Assembly (NCBI GenBank): GCA_002811645.1
Contig: PDIP01000003.1
Location: forward strand, 186,001 to 250,000
Direction of reading: 5' to 3'
Source of the DNA: Corallochytrium limacisporum Hawaii
Lineage: Eukaryota > Protista > Pluriformea
Length of the DNA stretch: 64,000 bases
Part shown: one piece after another, positions 26,100-41,451 of the stretch
How the letters are laid out: each line of letters starts with the position of its first letter
Position numbering within the stretch: the stretch's first letter is position 1
The notes under the pieces: model-generated
What the model was told of the DNA's origin: nothing
The model's database searches: none
The model's input: only the letters and a program-made list of their open reading frames with translations
Position numbers and translations under genes: made by a program

Positions 26100-27029
26100 G
26101 AGGGAAATGGTAGAGACAGGTCCCATTAAGGAACAACCCCTCCCCCGGTGCAACAGCGGCCCCTCCACAAGGATGGATGAATCCACGGGGAATTGTATAG
26201 AGACTACGTAAGTACGCAGTCCTGGTAGGCCTCCCATACGCGAGTACTTCGTCCCCTCCGTCGTTGTTGGCAAAATTTTCTCCTCAGAGAATGGGTGAGT
26301 TTTTTTTTCTTTTGGGCCCTGTGTTGTATGGCGTGACACTGGCCGCGGAGCCGAGCCATCCGAAGGCATACGGCATTACCTAAAGTATGGGTATGGACAT
26401 AAACGAAGTCGTCAAATCTGACGCACACGGTTCACTCAGTTGCATCGGGGTGTAAAGCTCATTTACATTAGTGCAGCTGTGGAACCCGATAGGTTTGGCA
26501 ACACGGGTTAACATGGCTTGCGCACATGCATTGAAGTAGATGATGCAATATCTCATCTGCTGTGCGCGCTCTGTTTCCAGCCCAGAGCATGCCTTGACAC
26601 AATGCATGACGGTGTAAACACACGATCTCACCTTTGTGCCTAGCAGGGCCCTAGATGAAGAATCATCAACATCCATACAATCCACATGAACATCATTCAA
26701 GACTGCATAACACAGAATGAAACGAGCGATCTTCAGGAATCAAGAACCCATGAATGAAAACTCTGGGTTGCGGTTAAGGTGGTGACGATGATGCCCACGC
26801 ATCACTCTCATTGTGAATGTACTACAGAGGTTGTGTCCAAACCACTTTAGACGAAATATTGGGATTCCAGTACTGAATGGGTCGAGGCAGAAGGGCCCAG
26901 CACTCGTGCTAGTGAAGGAAGGGAGGGGGGGCTCGGACGCGGCTTTACTTCTCGGGTCGCGCCCCGGCTGGTTCTCGCATTTTGCGGGGCTTTATCCGGC
27001 ATCCGTTATCGTTGCGGTATGCGGTTCCT

Positions 27030-33275: not shown

Positions 33276-33513
33276 AGACAAAGGAGCCTTCATTATCCAT
33301 CAAGCATTTAATGGCAATGTCGTTAGAATAGAGAGTTTACATATGCATTTGCTGAACCTGCCCTGTGTGTGTCCCAGATTGCCCTTTCAAACAGTCCCTC
33401 CCTCCTCCAACCACAAGGGCATTTTCGGCGTTTGTGATAAGGGGTATTTCAACGACGAAATTTGTTTTGGAAGCGTCACTTCACTGAAGAACAATACGCT
33501 ATATTTCGTAATC

Positions 33514-34044
33514 ATGACTTCCTTCCGGAGATTTTCATGCGACGATCTTTTACATATGGCCAGGGTTAACCTGGATCCATACACTGAAACATATAACCTA
33601 GGGTTCTATCTTCAATATTTGGGAACCTGGCCTGATCTGTTCCGGATCGCCACTTCTGCCAGTGGCCAAATGATGGGCTACGTGATGGGAAAGGTAGAGG
33701 GTGTTGCAAGCGAATGGCATGGACACGTCACCGCAATAACGGTTGCACCATCTTATCGTCGGCTTGGCCTGGCGGACAAACTGATGACCTTCTTGGAACA
33801 GGTCTCAGATAACCGCTACAACGGATATTTTGTGGACCTGTTTGTCCGCATGTCCAATGTGGCTGCCATCAAAATGTATGAGAAACGCGGGTATGTAGTT
33901 TATCGAAGAGTCATTGGATACTACTATGGTACGAATTCAGAAGACGCCTACGATATGCGGTTGGCCCTATCAGCGGACAAGGACAAGAAATCTGTGATCC
34001 CACTTAAGCGGCCAGTGTATCCTGAAGAATTAGAAAAATGGTAG
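33514..34044 (+). CDS. NAA20: NatB catalytic subunit
   Basis: MTSFRRFSCDDL..VNLDPYTETY, WHGHVTA, YRRLGLA, FVDLFVR, EDAYDMR. Confidence 0.96.
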   Translation: MTSFRRFSCDDLLHMARVNLDPYTETYNLGFYLQYLGTWPDLFRIATSASGQMMGYVMGKVEGVASEWHGHVTAITVAPSYRRLGLADKLMTFLEQVSDNRYNGYFVDLFVRMSNVAAIKMYEKRGYVVYRRVIGYYYGTNSEDAYDMRLALSADKDKKSVIPLKRPVYPEELEKW

Positions 34045-34100
34045 GTGCCGAATCGCGGAATAACTTCATTAATGTACATCGATTATTTAATAACTATATT

Positions 34101-34436
34101 TTATGCTAAGATTGACTTCAAAGCTGCCTTAAGGTCACCTTTATGCTCGCGTAGACGGCGTGCCGCCTTGGTTTCAGACTCCTCAGCCTGCGCTGCGAGA
34201 AGTTCTACATCCTCCTGCTTGACGTCAATCTTCAGCAGTTGTGCTTCGTACGCAGCTGCAGCTTTTTCTTCTTCCGCAACTTCCTTCATCAACTCCTTTA
34301 GGCGCTCATCAGCTTGCTCACTGCTACCGATCGTTGCCTCCTCAGCATAGTCAGTGACCTTCTCCAGGTCTGCTGCCCCAGAATCATGCTTCTTCTGCTG
34401 ATCCTGCACTTCCTGTTCTGGTTCTTCGGCTGCCAT
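34101..34436 (-). CDS. HYPK: Huntingtin-interacting protein K (NatA regulator)
   Basis: KHDSGAADLEKVTDYAEE signature and C-terminal UBA-like EDVELL...ARRLREHKGDLKAAL. Confidence 0.92.
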   Translation of the reverse strand: MAAEEPEQEVQDQQKKHDSGAADLEKVTDYAEEATIGSSEQADERLKELMKEVAEEEKAAAAYEAQLLKIDVKQEDVELLAAQAEESETKAARRLREHKGDLKAALKSILA

Positions 34437-34792
34437 TTTGTCCAAATGAAAAAGTTGAGGATGTACTCGAAGGATTATATGCTCTTTGCTGTTCCATTGC
34501 CGCCCGTCGGGTAGTTAGTGTTTTGCCTGAAATACCCCGGGGCACACCGTGGACACGCGGAAACAGTGAGTAGGGAGAGGAGGGACTTCCTGATGAAGAG
34601 GGCCGAATGGGGGCGCACCAGGAACAAATTCAATGCTAGGAGAGGGAAGTTAGACTTTATGTTGACGCCCAAGATCACACGATGCACACGCAACGACAAG
34701 ATATTTAAGTCACCCTGAAAAAGACAGAGCGTGATATTGTGATACCCTTCGTCGGGTCAGCCTGCAGGCAAGCTGAACCCGACAATGTGACG

Positions 34793-34963
34793 GTAAGTAC
34801 ACATGATATTCAAGGGCCGTGCGCGATTTAACCAAGCTAATGATCATGATGATTATTAACACCAATTAACCTCTAAGAAGTAATGATGCGGCGCGACATC
34901 TTTAGCTCCCGGTGAATAGCCTACTAACTTTATTTTTTTTCTCTGCTCTTTATCGTTTTCTAG
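34793..34963 (+). other. 171-nt spliceosomal intron in an apparently non-coding plus-strand transcript (snoRNA host)
   Basis: GTAAGT at 34793, TACTAAC at 34922-34928, long pyrimidine tract, TAG at 34961-34963. Both flanking genes are on the minus strand. Confidence 0.75.
34803..34920 (+). ncRNA. Candidate box C/D snoRNA, U61/SNORD61-like guide for 18S rRNA
   Basis: CCTCTAAGAAGT (34870-34881) is the exact complement of conserved 18S ACUUCUUAGAGG and is followed by 1 nt plus ATGA (D/D'). ATGATGA box at 34846-34852. Intronic location. Exact ends uncertain. Confidence 0.65.
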
Positions 34964-35621
34964 AATTCGTCTTTGATTTAGGCTTTGAGTCGGCAGTGGA
35001 AGCTCCAGATCCCGCCGCATGAGCGGCAGCGAAAATCGCCTGCTGGAGCTCGGCTGCGGTTACCTCTAGGGCCTTGGCACGTGAACCGATCACTTCCATC
35101 AATGCCAAAGCGCATTTTTCATTGTATTTCAGTGGAGGGACTTCCTTGGCCGCTTCCAGGGCTTCATACACTTCATCAGCAAAGAAGGCGTAGCGATCCG
35201 GAGCAGCCACTTGCATCAATGCAGTTGCGGTGGCAGGACCGACTCCTGTGAGTTGAGTAAGCGTCTTCAGGCACCCTTTGGCATCGTCAATGTTCTTGAA
35301 TGCCTCTGTGGTCACAGATTTGACAGTTTTCGCATCATTGCGGCGAATCAAAGCCATCAGAGTCGGGCGAAACTTACCCCGAGAAAGCTTCCATTGCATC
35401 AGCCTTTCAAGCTCAGACTTTTCAATATACTTCGGCTTCCGTTTTGCCACTATTCCAGGCAGTGTCTCATGTAGCCATGCATCGAGTTCGATTAGTGTGT
35501 CTCCATTCTTCTTCGCAGAAGCTAAGGCAGAGATGCATGTTTTGTATCCGTCAAGGGATGTCCTGACCGCAGCCAAGTCAGCGTCCTTCCAAAGCTTTAC
35601 AGCTCCTGTGCGTCCAGGCAT
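34950..35621 (-). CDS. Helix-hairpin-helix DNA-glycosylase-like protein (uncharacterised eukaryotic family)
   Basis: ELERLMQWKLSRGKFRPTL, HhH motif LTGVGPATATALM, downstream FFADE. Confidence 0.8.
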   Translation of the reverse strand: MPGRTGAVKLWKDADLAAVRTSLDGYKTCISALASAKKNGDTLIELDAWLHETLPGIVAKRKPKYIEKSELERLMQWKLSRGKFRPTLMALIRRNDAKTVKSVTTEAFKNIDDAKGCLKTLTQLTGVGPATATALMQVAAPDRYAFFADEVYEALEAAKEVPPLKYNEKCALALMEVIGSRAKALEVTAAELQQAIFAAAHAAGSGASTADSKPKSKTNSRKR

Positions 35622-36020
35622 GTTGACTGAATGTGCGCGAACTCCAATGTTCCAATGTAATCGGACTTTAAACTTTTTATTATCGACCGTGCGTAAATAC
35701 CAGAAGCATATACTGAGCTACGCGTCCGGGCCCTGAGCGCGAAGGATCCCCCTCCCGTTCTCAGCCCTTGGGGCAGGGACTGGCTGAAGGAAATAACGGG
35801 GGGGCGACAAAAGCCACACTCTCGATTGTCCTCGGTATGGAGTCGAAATGGAGGTACGTACAAGTTATGGTACTTGAAATTTTTGTTCATTAAATCACGT
35901 TATCTATGCACATACACTCTATCATCTTGTAAGACAATGTAATTGAAGATCGAAAATTTGAACTTGAAGGAACCTGACAATGTAAGGGAGAACATATTTT
36001 TTCTGGAACCTTTCTTGAAC

Positions 36021-36635
36021 ATGGTAGAGACAGCAGAAATTAAGCCACTGCAGGGAAAGCAGAGGCTTCGAGTTTGTGTCGTATGTAGTAGTAATAACAA
36101 TCGTAGTATGGAAGCCCATTGTGTGTTGGTAAGACACGGATGGAAAGTCAGATCATTTGGAACAGGCAACTTTGTTCGGTTGCCGGGAGCAAACCGATAT
36201 GAGCAGAACGTGTTCTCGTTCGAAACTACATATGATCACATGTACACCCTCCTCAAAGAAAAAAATGAGCAACTTTATCAGTCTACAGGTATTCTGAAAA
36301 TGTTAGACCGAAACAGAAACTGTAAGCCTCACCCAGAACGCTTCCAAGACTGCTACGAACGCTTCGACGTTGTGATTGCATGCGAAGAGCGCGTGTTTGA
36401 TCAAATCTGTGAGGATTTGGCCTCACGAGAACAAGATGGTACAGAATGGGTACATGTCATTAACATTGATATCAAAGATAACCATGAGGAGGCAGCAATA
36501 GGTGCAGAGCATATCTATGAACTATTGGAGATGATGAATGCCAGCGATGACCTAGATTCTGACATTGAGGGTATTTTGCTGGAGTTCTACCATCGCTTTG
36601 GAAGACCCTTAATGCACCATGTCGGTTTCTACTGA
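36021..36635 (+). CDS. SSU72: RNA Pol II CTD phosphatase
   Basis: VCSSNNNRSMEAH, SFGTG..VRLPG, CEERVFD, DIKDNHEEA. Confidence 0.97.
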   Translation: MVETAEIKPLQGKQRLRVCVVCSSNNNRSMEAHCVLVRHGWKVRSFGTGNFVRLPGANRYEQNVFSFETTYDHMYTLLKEKNEQLYQSTGILKMLDRNRNCKPHPERFQDCYERFDVVIACEERVFDQICEDLASREQDGTEWVHVINIDIKDNHEEAAIGAEHIYELLEMMNASDDLDSDIEGILLEFYHRFGRPLMHHVGFY

Positions 36636-38075: not shown

Positions 38076-40917
38076 CAATAGAGTGGCTTATTACTCTCTT
38101 CGGTCCTGGTCTACTGAAAGATCCCGGGAACCCACCAATACAAATTGTTAAGAAGTCGTCAAATGGTTTACCAAAAACCTGTGTGCCATTTCAAATAGTA
38201 AGAGCGACGAGGGCAAGCTCATTGAGGACTTCTGAAAACGCTCCTGCTTTAAATTCTGTTGTTGGCTGCTTCCCACACTACTCGAAAAGGCTACTGAATA
38301 AGTCTTGCCTCAAGCAACCTCACTCCGTACCACCAACGGCAAAGCGCCAATTTTCCACGACTACAGCTGCCAAAGTGAGTCGGCCTTCTTCATCCGAGGA
38401 CCAACGGGTACGAATTCACCCACACCACAGCGCACCCCTCACAACAAGCTCCTTCCCTTCCCTGTACGATAGCCTGCTCCGCGGTTGCACGCAAGCCCTG
38501 CAGTATCCGCGCGCGCCCACTCCCGCCCCCTACGGGGGCCCCAACAGAAGGTCTTAACTTTCCTAAAATTTCTGAGGTGTACCCTCAGCTATTCTCTCTC
38601 GCCCCTCCCCCGCCCCTCCCCTGGGGGCTCTCCTTTGCCTTTTGCTGCCCCTGCCCCGAAAGCGCAGCGAACTCGAAAGGAAAACTTAGGTTCCACGACG
38701 GCGGAAGACGGTCCCCGAGTCAGCAGGAGGGGGACTTATTCTGCGATGAGAATCTCCTTCCCGACCGACCGTTCCAAGGCGAGATGGGATCACGAAGGAT
38801 ATAACGAAGTAATAGGCGCTCACCAAAGGGGGACAAGGGGAACCTTCCCCGTACCCTCCACTGACAGGACAAACAACGAAGATTCTCTCGTGCCCCTACT
38901 GTTTTTGTTTCTCCCAACCTGCAGAAAATGTACCTAGAATTTCGAGCTCAATTGTGATATACGGCAATATCGGCACACCGCACCAGTGCGAGTCCCGCCG
39001 CAGAGCGGAGGAAACACATAACTGACTGTTTTCGAATAGAATTAAAATGGCTTTGTTGTTGTGACTTTTTCGTCACCTCGTATGGACGGAATGCGGAAAA
39101 AGGCGGTAGCTGTGCATGATCGAAACTGGGGCAACGGCAGCGTATGGCACGGTTGAGGGTGCCATATGCGAACGAACACGCTTGTCTTTGTTGTGTTTTA
39201 CGAGATCGACTGAGGCATCATTTGCGCATGTGCAAAGCCTCAACGTACACGGACGGGGACCGGTGATCGATCATGTCTTTGGATACAGGTGCTGACTAGA
39301 ACATATCCAAGCGCCGGTCCAAAACCCGAACATTGGATCGAATTTGTGTTGGCTCGACTAGTTTCAAGTTTAGGAGCGTCACAGATAACGACTGAAACAT
39401 ACGCCTCGGTGACGATCGAGTGATCCTGAAACCCATGCACATGTCAAAGTCGATGACCTGTGCTGAACCTGGCACAGTGGCGTGTGGGTCCCAAACTGTT
39501 CTCGTTTGGAACATGGCCTTGTAAAGTTTGGTTGCAGTGCTGGGTCCGCGGCTGTTATGGCTCTGAAGCGCTACCATCGTAGCATCACAGCATAAGGGAC
39601 GGTTCACATACACAGATATGGAAAACAGACCACAACCGATGTCTCGACGAGCACGGCACTGAAAGATCATTTGCTAGCAAGAAGCTCAACACAAACTTAA
39701 CAAGAGACCCCGGAAAGCATCGTAGGTTCCCCTTTCCCAAGGCTTTGACTGTACCAGGATCCATGCGAGTGATACTGAATGTACCGGAGCGGTGGTCAAT
39801 GTGCTAAACAGATGAGGGGTTCAGCTTTAAATGTTTCATTAACCTTGCCAACGGGTTATTGCGACCGAGGGGGATTTCAGGCGGGTGGGTCAAGCGGAGA
39901 GTATTAGGCATCTAGATGTGGTTGCATCCATCTTAGTGGTACGAATATGTCAGATCCTTGGCGATTCGATACAATTTTGAATGTTTATTTGGAAAAGCTA
40001 GTAATTTTGCTTGAGATGTCAATATAATCATGGCTTGATTGCTTGCATCAGCGCATTGTCAGGTCCAGATGTGTTGGGATAGCGGGAAAGAACTCCCTGG
40101 GTCTGCATCAAAGTCAGGGCAGCCTTCAATGTCCAGCTCCATACGGTCCTCATAAAGTGGACATGTCTTTGTACGGGCTGCAGACGCAAGATTCATAGTG
40201 GAACCCAGTTCCAACAGAGCAAGGAGTACTGTCAGCTATACTGGCGGTCTGGAGTCTGAAGGGACGTCAAACGAGAAATTGGGAAGGAATAGGGATTCAC
40301 GCCCAAAAAAACACTTGAAATACACCCTCAGTTTGCTCTCTCAAGCAAAGGCAGACAGCAGGAGCAAACTCGATGGGAGTGGTACAGTGCAGACTTCAGA
40401 AAGCAAATATGCTCTACATAGGGGAACCTGGACCCGGCTGGAACTGACGGATCAGGAGAGTCGCAAAGCCTATCTGCACAAAGTACCGGTCCTGGCATGC
40501 GACTGCCCTACATAGGGTCAAGCTCGGTGGACTCTGTTGATGATAGCGTATTCAACATTGAACGGAAAGCGACCACTGACGCTGCCAAGATATTACCGGC
40601 TGTGGTCAAAGGAAATCTTGTCCGAATCAAAATATTACGCCGAGATCCACCTGACATCGGTGCACTCAAAGACCGCCGTGAACCTCCTGCCGAACGGTGC
40701 CAGGTTGGTCAAACAGTTCGGCGGCCATCCCCTTGTGCGATGCAGACCATAGTCAACGAAACGATGGACACAATGAAAAGCAAGGAAACTGAGGTAGGCA
40801 GCAATGCTGATGATTTAGATCGCTAGGCGGCCTACATTTGATCGCATCAACGTGATATAATAACCATCAAGCCCAAGGCATAATGTACTGTACAATTCAC
40901 TTGCAAGTGCTACTTCA

Positions 40918-41451
40918 TTACTGTGACGGAAAGTCAGGCTTGCCGCCCTTGCTAGCCTCGGCCAAAGCTGTAATCCACTGATTCAGGTATTGTTTGTCCC
41001 GTGCTCCCGCAAATTCACCAACCGGCTTACCCTTCCAGAACCCAAGAACCTTTGGAATTGCAGCCACCTTGTACTGTGCTGCAAGTTCGTCATTCTCGTC
41101 GACATCGACCTTGGCCAGGACAAAGTCATCTGAGCTGGCTTCCAAAAGTTCGGTTAGCGCGGGGGTTAAAAATCGGCAAGGTGCACACCAGCTGTGCATA
41201 TGATAAAGAGTATACAAATCATCTGGTTAGTATAATCCAATTCATAGTTTCTGAGGGTTCTACCCAATTTGGGTCTCAAATACTTACTCGGCATAGAAGT
41301 CAACGACTACTGGCTTATCGGAATCAATGACCGACTGCCATTCAGCAAAATTGACATCTTTGACTGTAACCTTAGTACGGACTGCCATTACGGTAGGCAC
41401 CGGGGACCGCATGGCCTTTGAAATCGCCCGATTCGCAACGATACGCAGCAT
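40918..41451 (-). CDS. TXN2: Mitochondrial thioredoxin, two exons join(41288..41451,40918..41191), 145 aa
   Basis: Presequence MLRIVANRAISKAMR..., then KPVVVDFYAD^WCAPC after removing a 96-nt intron (GTAAGT at 41287, TACTAAC at 41232-41226, CAG at 41192). Confidence 0.92.

What the first reader, a model, noticed from the sequence alone, without database searches (positions are those of the whole stretch)
34793..34963. Hidden non-coding snoRNA host gene: perfect intron, antisense to its neighbours, carrying a U61-like 18S guide
Seen: between two minus-strand genes (HYPK and the HhH protein), the plus strand has a consensus intron (GTAAGT, TACTAAC, poly-Y, TAG). Its acceptor lies inside the last codons of the HhH gene, and no convincing plus-strand ORF uses it. 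Inside are ATGATGA and a 12-nt perfect complement to 18S ACUUCUUAGAGG, followed by N+ATGA. Known (recalled): human U61 has the same guide followed by N+CTGA and methylates that uridine; vertebrate intronic C/D snoRNAs end about 70-80 nt from the acceptor (here 77 nt from the ATGA). Inference: an intron-poor unicell keeps an SNHG-like non-coding host fired from the HYPK bidirectional promoter, which also makes antisense RNA over the HhH gene. Box assignment is ambiguous (C=34803/D=34883 or C=34840-46/D=34912), and neither D box is canonical CTGA.
Basis: partly seen in the sequence, partly recalled or inferred. Interest (0 to 1): 0.82.

Follow-up and report, generated by a model that had tools for sequence, protein, structure and literature searches.

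The report
U61-type methylation guide RNA in intron
A rare intron-like stretch in a nearly intron-free protist genome very probably carries a small RNA that guides methylation of one conserved uridine in 18S ribosomal RNA; this arrangement is already known from animals, fungi and other places in this same genome.

Summary
The guide sits in the same register as the Rfam SNORD61 and plant snoU61 consensus. It pairs with the organism's own 18S rRNA by 11 Watson-Crick pairs plus one G.U, and selects U1374, the equivalent of human U1442. It is the only such guide in the 24.1-Mb genome.

AUGA 34883-86 is the terminal D box. Its only kink-turn partner is GA 34825-26, inside a degenerate C box GCGAUUU:
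- 6-bp terminal stem, 34816-21 with 34887-92;
- 3-nt bulge;
- G.A/A.G, then U.U, then U-A in place of the usual G-C (shuffle P 0.0006 to 0.013).

The perfect AUGAUGA is the internal C' box. U61-type snoRNAs on environmental contigs show the same GAUU/AUGA pairing and spacing, and their terminal stem covaries.

The intron signals match this organism's consensus and are very rare in the genome. However, two RNA assemblies show no contig over exon 1 or the intron and no splice joint. The T-rich tract is also the antisense of the neighbour's poly(A) region. The non-coding host transcript therefore remains inferred.

This scan has already reported intron-borne snoRNAs, including non-coding hosts, elsewhere in this genome. 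Verdict: a probable new member of a known kind, of modest interest.

The parts
34702..34709 (+). TATA-like TATTTAAG, a possible core promoter for the + strand host transcript. The start site would be near 34735 and exon 1 about 55-60 nt long. Inferred only.
   Evidence: Read. No RNA support.
34793..34963 (+). 171-nt intron-like stretch: GTAAGT, then TACTAAC 34922-28, a T-rich tract and TAG 34961-63.
   Evidence: It uses the same signals as the coding intron at 41192-41287. No junction was seen.
34816..34892 (+). Proposed 77-nt box C/D snoRNA of the U61 type.
34816..34821 (+). 5' strand of the terminal stem (GCCGUG), pairing with 34887-92.
   Evidence: The MFE fold predicts it. The same register covaries in environmental relatives.
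34823..34829 (+). Degenerate C box GCGAUUU. G25.A86 and A26.G85 are the sheared pairs, followed by U27.U84 and U28-A83.
   Evidence: shuffle P 0.0006 strict, 0.013 loose. GATT is invariant in alignment A1.
34840..34843 (+). Internal D' box AUGA, followed by the 3-nt spacer UCA.
   Evidence: Layout comparison with the environmental U61-type RNAs. Inference.
34847..34852 (+).
   Evidence: Inference from the layout.
34870..34881 (+). Antisense guide CCUCUAAGAAGU. It pairs with own 18S 1371-82, and the fifth nucleotide before the D box selects U1374.
   Evidence: It is unique in the genome. It is identical to the SNORD61 and snoU61 consensus guide.
34883..34886 (+). Terminal D box AUGA (non-canonical first base).
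   Evidence: The same AUGA is paired with GAUU C boxes in environmental U61-type snoRNAs.
34887..34892 (+). 3' strand of the terminal stem (UGCGGC).
34922..34928 (+). Branch-point consensus TACTAAC. It is one of only two in 128 kb counting both strands; the other lies in the confirmed coding intron.
34910..35639 (-). Transcribed neighbour (223-aa ORF 34950-35621). Its AATAAA is at 34934-29 and its mRNA ends at about 34910, overlapping the branch point and T-tract of the intron in antisense.
   Evidence: Contigs of both runs end at 34910 or 34911. Sequence.
34054..34466 (-). HYPK mRNA (CDS 34101 to about 34436), divergent from the putative host transcript.

Best explanation
A box C/D snoRNA of about 77 nt lies on the + strand at 34816-34892. 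It is the organism's U61/SNORD61-type guide. Its 12-nt antisense element pairs with 18S 1371-82 and places fibrillarin on U1374, the equivalent of human 18S U1442.

The RNA folds into a kink-turn made of:
- a 6-bp terminal stem;
- a 3-nt bulge;
- a degenerate C box, GCGAUUU;
- a D box, AUGA, in which the usual G-C closing pair is replaced by U-A.
AUGA 34840 and UGAUGA 34847 are the internal D' and C' boxes.

The snoRNA sits in a 171-nt spliceosomal-type intron (34793-34963) of a short + strand transcript that cannot code for a protein. It is presumably released by splicing, debranching and exonuclease trimming.

Shown: the motifs, the duplex and its register, the kink-turn geometry, uniqueness in the genome, and the rarity of the intron signals.
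Inferred: expression, splicing, the extent of the host transcript, and the methylation itself.
My odds: about 0.8 that a real U61-type snoRNA is here, about 0.6 for this box layout, and about 0.55-0.6 that it is released from a spliced non-coding host. The confidence figure given for this explanation (0.6) is for the statement as a whole.
For: Guide and register:
- They are identical to the Rfam SNORD61 consensus and the plant snoU61 consensus.
- The fifth-nucleotide rule selects own 18S U1374. SNORD61 targets 18S U1442 (PMC3511933).
- It is the only such guide in the genome.

Kink-turn:
- GA 34825-26 is the only compatible partner for AUGA 34883. It comes with a 6-bp stem at offset 0, a 3-nt bulge, U.U and U-A. 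Shuffle P is 0.0006 on strict criteria and 0.013 on loose ones.
- The MFE fold contains the stem.
- Environmental U61-type snoRNAs have the same stem, 3-nt bulge, GAUU ... AUGA and stem. Their GA lies 42-44 nt before the guide, against 45 nt here. They score 24-33 bits on snoU61.
- In the alignment with those relatives, the terminal stem in this register is 87.7% paired against 63.8% in shuffles, with 6 pairs showing compensatory changes and 0 of 500 shuffles reaching it.

Intron:
- GTAAGT, TACTAAC and YAG match the coding intron at 41192-41287 and snoRNA introns elsewhere in the genome.
- Chance expects 0.12 such stretches per window. The genome holds 3 loci of this spacing class, against 31 in the control.
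- The D box lies 41 nt before the branch A. The two canonical single-snoRNA introns (L011, L013) have about 55-62 nt by my count from the printed sequences.
Against: - There is no canonical C or D box. The C box keeps only the GAU core, and the flipped-out bulge base is C rather than U.
- The Rfam score is 20.2 bits, below the gathering score of 43, and nothing in the window reaches any gathering score.
- A sequence-only model of the 5' half of the environmental relatives does not find this locus. The likeness is in the boxes and spacing, not in demonstrable sequence homology.
- The environmental relatives were found with a pattern that already contained AAUGA, so the D box itself is ascertained by the search. 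Only its C-box partner is independent.
- Other intronic snoRNAs of this genome have canonical CUGAUGA and CUGA boxes.
- No RNA contig covers 34467-34909 and no splice joint appears in two runs. Those runs are contig assemblies, their RNA nature is a guess, and they would not be expected to keep small RNAs or rare transcripts.
- The T-tract can be explained as the neighbour's poly(A) region read in antisense.
Confidence: 0.6

Rival explanations
1. The snoRNA is real but has a different layout. It would be a double-guide RNA of about 90 nt (about 34800-34890) with C box AUGAUAU 34803-09, a first guide 34809-20 against 28S (selecting G1881 before a GCGA D' box at 34823-26), C' box AUGAUGA, the U61 guide and D box AUGA.
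For: 34809-20 is a perfect 12-nt complement to 28S 1879-90. It starts right after the C-like box and sits in a valid register, positions 3-14, before GCGA. The expectation for a perfect 12-mer in 171 nt is only about 0.05 (the rate comes).
Against: There is no terminal stem for these boxes. The C6/D1 position would be an A.A mismatch. The kink-turn test finds no partner at 34805. The environmental relatives place the C box 42-44 nt before the guide, not 65 nt. I could not confirm 28S G1881 as a known methylation site.
Confidence: 0.15
2. The snoRNA is real but is not released by splicing. It would be made from its own promoter or from an unspliced divergent transcript of the HYPK promoter. The intron-like signals would be partly fortuitous, with the T-tract belonging to the neighbour's poly(A) region.
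For: No junction or exon contig was found. AATAAA on the minus strand at 34934-29 and the mRNA end at about 34910 explain the T-rich tract. A TATA-like box lies at 34702.
Against: GTAAGT and TACTAAC are both depleted here. TACTAAC occurs twice in 128 kb, both times in an intron context. The full signal is rarer in the genome than its reversed control. Other snoRNAs of this genome are intronic (earlier follow-ups listed).
Confidence: 0.2
3. It is a chance assembly of motifs or a decayed relic, with no stable RNA and no function.
For: The boxes are non-canonical, the score is below the Rfam threshold, and no RNA evidence exists. Guide-like complements next to NTGA are common, 17 per window.
Against: The joint occurrence of intron signals, guide register at a known site, kink-turn geometry (P 0.0006-0.013) and a layout shared with independent U61-type RNAs is very unlikely by chance. 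No other guide for this site exists in the genome. Perfect splice signals in a non-coding stretch of an intron-purged genome suggest selection.
Confidence: 0.12
4. The C box is AUGAUCA 34840-46 (or AUGAUGA), the D' box is AUGA 34883 and the D box is GUGA 34912-15, with a terminal stem GCUA/UAGC, giving an 85-nt RNA.
For: C45-G12 would be a matched pair, and a 4-bp stem 34836-39 with 34917-20 exists.
Against: The geometry is off, with a 2-nt bulge and the stem offset by 1; shuffle P is 0.067. The D box would lie only 12 nt before the branch A, against about 55-62 nt (my count) in the canonical cases L011 and L013. The RNA would overlap the neighbour's mRNA end. The complement before GUGA (34895-907) is in a poor register, reaching only position 5, and has 2 G.U pairs.
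Confidence: 0.05

Closest known systems
SNORD61 / U61 (Rfam RF00270; human gene in an RBMX intron, target 18S Um1442)
   Same: The 12-nt guide CCUCUAAGAAGU is identical, with one spacer nucleotide before the D box, so the same uridine is selected. Size is similar (72 against about 77 nt). Both have a compact internal D'/C' pair and both are intronic.
   Different: The boxes are GCGAUUU and AUGA rather than AUGAUGA and CUGA. The score is 20.2 bits against a gathering score of 43. The host is non-coding rather than RBMX. The duplex on the organism's own 18S ends in a G.U pair.
Plant snoU61 (Rfam RF01170, same clan CL00067) and the environmental U61-type snoRNAs found here (group A, e.g. L023, L027, L028, L052; group B, e.g. 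L030, L041)
   Same: The guide and register are the same. Group A, and by eye group B, have the same stem, 3-nt bulge, GAUU ... AUGA and stem kink-turn, and the distance from the C box to the guide is almost the same.
   Different: There is no significant sequence similarity outside the boxes and the guide. Land-plant snoU61 has canonical GUGAUGA and CUGA boxes. Group A contigs carry plant-type snoRNA neighbours (snoZ196). Group B is a double-guide RNA with a hairpin insert. The taxa of these contigs were not determined.
Non-coding snoRNA host genes (animal UHG/GAS5/SNHG genes; fungal non-coding hosts with one snoRNA per intron). These are named from general knowledge.
   Same: The exons have no ORF, and the only evident payload is an intronic C/D snoRNA.
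   Different: No spliced transcript has been shown here. There would be a single intron, and exon 2 would run antisense into the 3' end of a convergent coding gene.
Other intron-borne C/D snoRNAs of this same genome (L011/L021, L013/L022, L014; earlier scan follow-ups s1-562675 and s1-571264)
   Same: The splice signals are the same (GTAAGT, TACTAAC), as is the principle of a snoRNA in a rare retained intron, including 5' leader and non-coding contexts.
   Different: Those RNAs have canonical CUGAUGA and CUGA boxes. This one has the matched GAUU/AUGA variant.

Membership tests
Box C/D snoRNA | Antisense element of at least 10 nt ending 1-2 nt before a D or D' box, with the fifth nucleotide opposite an rRNA residue | tested here: met
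   A 12-bp duplex (11 Watson-Crick plus 1 G.U) occupies positions 2-13 before AUGA 34883 and selects own 18S U1374.
Box C/D snoRNA | Canonical C box RUGAUGA near the 5' end and D box CUGA near the 3' end | tested here: not met
   The boxes are GCGAUUU and AUGA, and no CTGA occurs in the intron. The perfect AUGAUGA is internal, in the C' position.
Box C/D snoRNA | Kink-turn: terminal stem, 3-nt bulge, tandem G.A/A.G, U.U and a closing pair between the C and D boxes | tested here: met
   6-bp stem, 3-nt bulge, G25.A86, A26.G85, U27.U84 and U28-A83; shuffle P 0.0006-0.013. The stem is predicted by the MFE fold and covaries in relatives.
Box C/D snoRNA | A stable RNA of 60-100 nt bound by Snu13, Nop56, Nop58 and fibrillarin | not testable with these tools
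   Only contig assemblies of two runs were on hand. None covers the locus, and such assemblies would not be expected to keep small RNAs.
SNORD61 / snoU61 clan (Rfam CL00067) | Score at or above the family's gathering threshold | tested here: not met
   RF00270 scores 20.2 bits against 43. It gives no hit at genome scale. Environmental U61-type RNAs also stay below threshold, at 24-33.5 against 55.
SNORD61 / snoU61 clan (Rfam CL00067) | Same guide, same register and same 18S target uridine | tested here: met
   The consensus alignments, the organism's own 18S, and the human target U1442 in PMC3511933.
Spliceosomal intron | 5' splice site, branch point and 3' splice site that fit the organism's own introns | tested here: met
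   GTAAGT, TACTAAC and TAG, as in the coding intron at 41192-41287 and the snoRNA introns. The rarity is shown.
Spliceosomal intron | A spliced junction seen in RNA | tested here: inconclusive
   No joint and no contig over exon 1 or the intron in X1 and X2. These are contigs, which show presence but not absence.
Non-coding snoRNA host gene | A spliced polyadenylated transcript without an ORF whose intron carries the snoRNA | tested here: inconclusive
   The lack of an ORF was read. The transcript itself was not seen. The first + strand poly(A) hexamer after 34964 is at 35889.

The most novel reading that the evidence does not exclude
U61-type snoRNAs in at least three separate lineages share a co-varying, non-canonical kink-turn: C box xxGAUUx with D box AUGA, so that U-A replaces the usual G-C. 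The lineages are this holozoan protist, contigs carrying plant-type snoRNA neighbours, and a freshwater-sediment eukaryote. This would be a family-specific alternative box pair, either ancient or repeatedly selected. In this genome its carrier would be a dedicated non-coding host whose second exon converges on, and might regulate, the neighbouring gene.
Probability: 0.2. Interest if true: 0.5.

Novelty: new member of a known kind. Interest (0 to 1): 0.35.

Why it matters
It adds one case to the pattern that the few introns kept by an intron-purged relative of animals are often carriers of snoRNAs, here with no coding host at all. It points to a testable rRNA methylation (18S Um1374) shared with animals and plants but not, as far as I recall, with baker's yeast. 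It is also a natural example of a compensated C/D kink-turn, U-A in place of G-C, that standard snoRNA finders and Rfam thresholds miss. None of this overturns current understanding.

Tried and rejected
- The Rfam gathering scan of the whole window gave nothing. RF00270 over the genome gave no hit. The RF01960 genome search failed, so I located the 18S by a universal primer pattern instead.
- Pattern searches for canonical intronic snoRNAs were too strict to give a large sample. They returned 1-6 hits against 0-6 in the controls.
- The sequence-only model R1, built from the 5' halves of the environmental U61-type RNAs, did not detect this locus in the window at E up to 10. I therefore do not claim sequence homology beyond the boxes and the guide.
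- RNA evidence: the two runs gave no coverage of the locus and no joint. This is no support, but it is not evidence against.
- I tried to map 28S G1881 and the 28S 2865-77 complement to known yeast or human methylation sites from memory. The result was not reliable and I dropped it.
- Folding energy of the intron or the snoRNA is not better than shuffles, as is usual for C/D RNAs.
- The notes for 26107-26511 and 38950-40860 in this window were checked for snoRNA guides and none was found.
- A link of exon 1 to the downstream Ssu72 gene is rejected. Its contig starts at 35926 without a joint.
- A paper search for Corallochytrium plus snoRNA found nothing.

Full report
**1. What is in the sequence**

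- GTAAGT 34793-98
- ATGATAT 34803-09
- ATGATCA and ATGATGA 34840-52
- CCTCTAAGAAGT 34870-81, then A, then ATGA 34883-86
- GTGA 34912-15
- TACTAAC 34922-28
- a T-rich tract, and TAG 34961-63

No CTGA occurs in the stretch.

The flanking genes both lie on the minus strand. One is HYPK, ORF 34101-34445 (Pfam UBA_HYPK, E 1.9e-13). The other is a 223-aa ORF at 34950-35621 with no Pfam hit. The acceptor lies 10-13 nt inside the end of that ORF.

The putative exons cannot code. The only ATG before the donor (34785) is followed at once by TGA, and all three frames stop soon after 34964 (read). I built and searched no joined exon sequence.

**2. The organism and its rRNA**

The assembly has 24,109,830 bases in 286 contigs. 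Its rDNA is on contig C219: 18S, 5.8S and 28S.

The size, the near absence of introns and two RNA data sets from 2015 fit Corallochytrium limacisporum (24.1 Mb, about 0.0 introns per CDS kb; PMC5560861). This identification is an inference.

The organism's own 18S reads GCUUCUUAGAGG at 1371-82. The guide therefore forms 11 Watson-Crick pairs plus a terminal G.U. The word with A occurs only once in the genome, as the guide itself. By the fifth-nucleotide rule the target is U1374.

The Rfam SNORD61 consensus has the same 12 nt followed by one nucleotide and CUGA. So does plant snoU61. SNORD61 is listed as guiding human 18S U1442 from an RBMX intron (PMC3511933; also PMC12288042). No other guide for this site exists in the genome.

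**3. Is it more than chance?**

Taken one at a time, the pieces are not rare:
- 12-mers complementary to rRNA occur 45 times in the window, with 41 expected.
- Guides of at least 12 bp next to NTGA occur 17 times.
- Requiring RTGATGA upstream as well leaves 0.15 expected per window and 1 seen, this one.

The weight comes from their co-occurrence. The composite lies inside one of only two stretches in the window that carry the organism's intron signals.
- Chance expects 0.12 such stretches per window.
- TACTAAC occurs only twice in 128 kb. The other copy is in the coding intron at 41192-41287, which reads GTAAGT..TACTAAC..CAG on the minus strand.
- Genome-wide, GTAAGT-N105-135-TACTAAC-N8-38-YAG has 3 loci against 31 for the reversed control.

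The composite also hits the U61 site in the exact register.

**4. Which boxes?**

I tested all kink-turn arrangements. For D = AUGA 34883-86, the upstream sequence offers exactly one partner, GA 34825-26. The arrangement is:
- a 6-bp stem, GCCGUG 34816-21 with UGCGGC 34887-92, starting directly after the D box;
- a 3-nt bulge, CGC;
- G.A and A.G, then U27.U84, then U28-A83.

Shuffling the upstream 77 nt gives this in 0.06% of trials on the strict criteria and 1.3% on loose ones. The MFE fold contains the stem.

For GUGA 34912 the best arrangement has a 4-bp stem, a 2-nt bulge and a stem offset of 1, with P 0.067. It would also put the D box 12 nt from the branch A. For the C-like box at 34803 there is no stem at all.

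My layout is therefore, in order:
- 5' stem strand 34816-21
- C box GCGAUUU 34823-29
- a 10-nt spacer
- D' box AUGA 34840-43
- spacer UCA
- C' box UGAUGA 34847-52
- a 17-nt spacer
- guide 34870-81
- one spacer nucleotide, A
- D box AUGA 34883-86
- 3' stem strand 34887-92

The non-canonical first base of the D box (A) is matched by U at C-box position 6. This keeps the pair that is normally G-C.

**5. Independent relatives**

A metagenome scan for the 17-mer made of the guide plus AAUGA returned 88 loci.

Many of them are snoRNAs. Of the 78 hits with enough flanking sequence, 37 have TGATT in the C-box region. They form 13 distinct sequences, two of which look like chance matches and 11 of which were aligned.

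- **Group A** reads stem, NGU, GAUUC ... CYGA-UGC-UGAUUx ... guide-A-AUGA, stem.
- **Group B** is a double-guide RNA, read by eye as GAGC-AAG-GAUUA ... AUGA-GCUC.

Group A members score 24-33.5 bits on Rfam snoU61, below its threshold of 55. They lie next to plant-type snoRNAs such as snoZ196. Land-plant snoU61 itself has GUGAUGA and CUGA.

A programmatic check finds the same geometry (stem of at least 4 bp, 3-nt bulge, GAUU, A1 paired) in 11 of 45 distinct contexts. All 11 are group A. In nine of them the GA lies 42-50 nt before the guide (42-44 in eight, 50 in L058); for L037 and L044 the check reported an internal GA 24 nt before the guide. Here the distance is 45 nt.

In the alignment of this locus with 11 group A sequences, GATT of the C box is invariant. 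The terminal stem in my register is 87.7% paired, against 63.8% in shuffles and 30-54% when slid. All six stem pairs show compensatory changes, and 0 of 500 shuffles reach the observed values.

Two cautions apply. My pattern contained AAUGA, so the D box is ascertained by the search and only its C-box partner is independent. Also, a sequence-only model of the group A 5' halves does not find this locus. The resemblance is one of architecture, and I claim no sequence homology beyond the guide and the boxes.

**6. The intron and the host**

Other introns of this genome carry canonical C/D snoRNAs, with CUGAUGA and CUGA boxes, 11-13-nt guides and terminal stems. In the two single-snoRNA cases (L011, L013) the D box lies about 55-62 nt before the branch A, by my count from the sequences printed. 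They sit in coding genes and in a 5' leader.

Earlier follow-ups of this scan reported the same elsewhere in the genome, including a non-coding host and transcript-confirmed leader introns. Here the D box lies 41 nt before the branch A and 77 nt before the acceptor.

The host transcript, however, is not shown. The contigs of runs X1 and X2 cover the neighbouring genes only: 33448-34068, 34054-34466, 34910-35639 and 35926-36618. They leave 34467-34909 empty and show no joints. These are contig assemblies whose RNA nature is a guess. They cannot show absence, and I would not expect small RNAs or rare, unstable transcripts to survive in them.

Both runs end the neighbour's contig at 34910 or 34911, 19 nt past a minus-strand AATAAA at 34934-29. 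The T-tract of the 'intron' is therefore also the neighbour's poly(A) region in antisense, and it is not independent evidence.

A TATA-like TATTTAAG at 34702 would give an exon 1 of about 55-60 nt. That is inference only. 'Bidirectional promoter' is untested. The HYPK contig ends at 34466, about 270 nt from that putative start.

**7. Other observations**

The intron holds a perfect 12-nt complement to 28S 1879-90 at 34809-20, directly after the C-like ATGATAT and in register with GCGA 34823-26. This supports the double-guide rival, to which I give 0.15. In my layout it overlaps the 5' strand of the stem and would be a coincidence, with an expectation of about 0.05.

A 13-bp complement with 2 G.U pairs to 28S 2865-77 at 34895-907 is in a poor register.

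**8. Verdict**

- The U61-type snoRNA is probable, at about 0.8.
- The box assignment is revised.
- The intron is likely on sequence grounds, at about 0.6.
- The host transcript, the promoter sharing and the antisense role are unproven.
- The kind of thing is known from animals, fungi and this same genome, so this is a new member of a known kind and of modest interest.

Noticed in passing
window 34809-34820 (+): A perfect 12-nt complement to own 28S 1879-90. It starts right after the C-like ATGATAT and sits in a valid register (positions 3-14) before GCGA 34823-26, which would select 28S G1881. I could not tell whether that is a known methylation site.
   Followed up: partly
window 34838-34858 (+): A near-palindrome around the ATGATCATGATGA repeat folds into a 9-bp hairpin with a UGA loop in every MFE fold. 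This hairpin would compete with the D'/C' boxes.
   Followed up: no
window 34910-34949 (-): The neighbour's 3' UTR has AATAAA at 34934-29. In both RNA assemblies its mRNA ends at 34910 or 34911, overlapping the branch point and T-tract of the + strand intron.
   Followed up: yes
whole window and genome G000: Splice-signal words are depleted. TACTAAC occurs 2 times in 128 kb, where a uniform model expects about 8. GTAAGT occurs 5 and 11 times per strand, where about 16 are expected. The full intron pattern is rarer in the genome than its reversed control (3 loci against 31). This looks like selection against stray splice signals.
   Followed up: partly
L030, L033, L039, L041 and related freshwater-sediment contigs: A conserved double-guide C/D snoRNA. 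It combines a UCUGUCAAUCC guide before CUGA with the U61 guide before AUGA, and carries a covarying hairpin insert between them. The same first guide occurs in this genome's L014 snoRNA, where it targets 18S U1227. The taxon is unknown.
   Followed up: partly
L048 9-93, L052 738-822, L039 3050-3136: The environmental contigs that carry U61-type snoRNAs also carry other plant-type C/D snoRNAs just under Rfam thresholds (snoZ196 at 49.7-52.4 bits, snoR77Y at 43.8 bits). These are snoRNA gene clusters of uncultured eukaryotes.
   Followed up: no
window 33378-35018, run X2: Run X2 differs from the window at about 0.5% of positions, for example 34947 T>G in the T-tract, 34982 and 35018. It probably comes from a second strain. 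Its contigs do not cover the snoRNA.
   Followed up: no
   Followed up: no
The guide has kept U, giving a G.U pair.
   Followed up: yes
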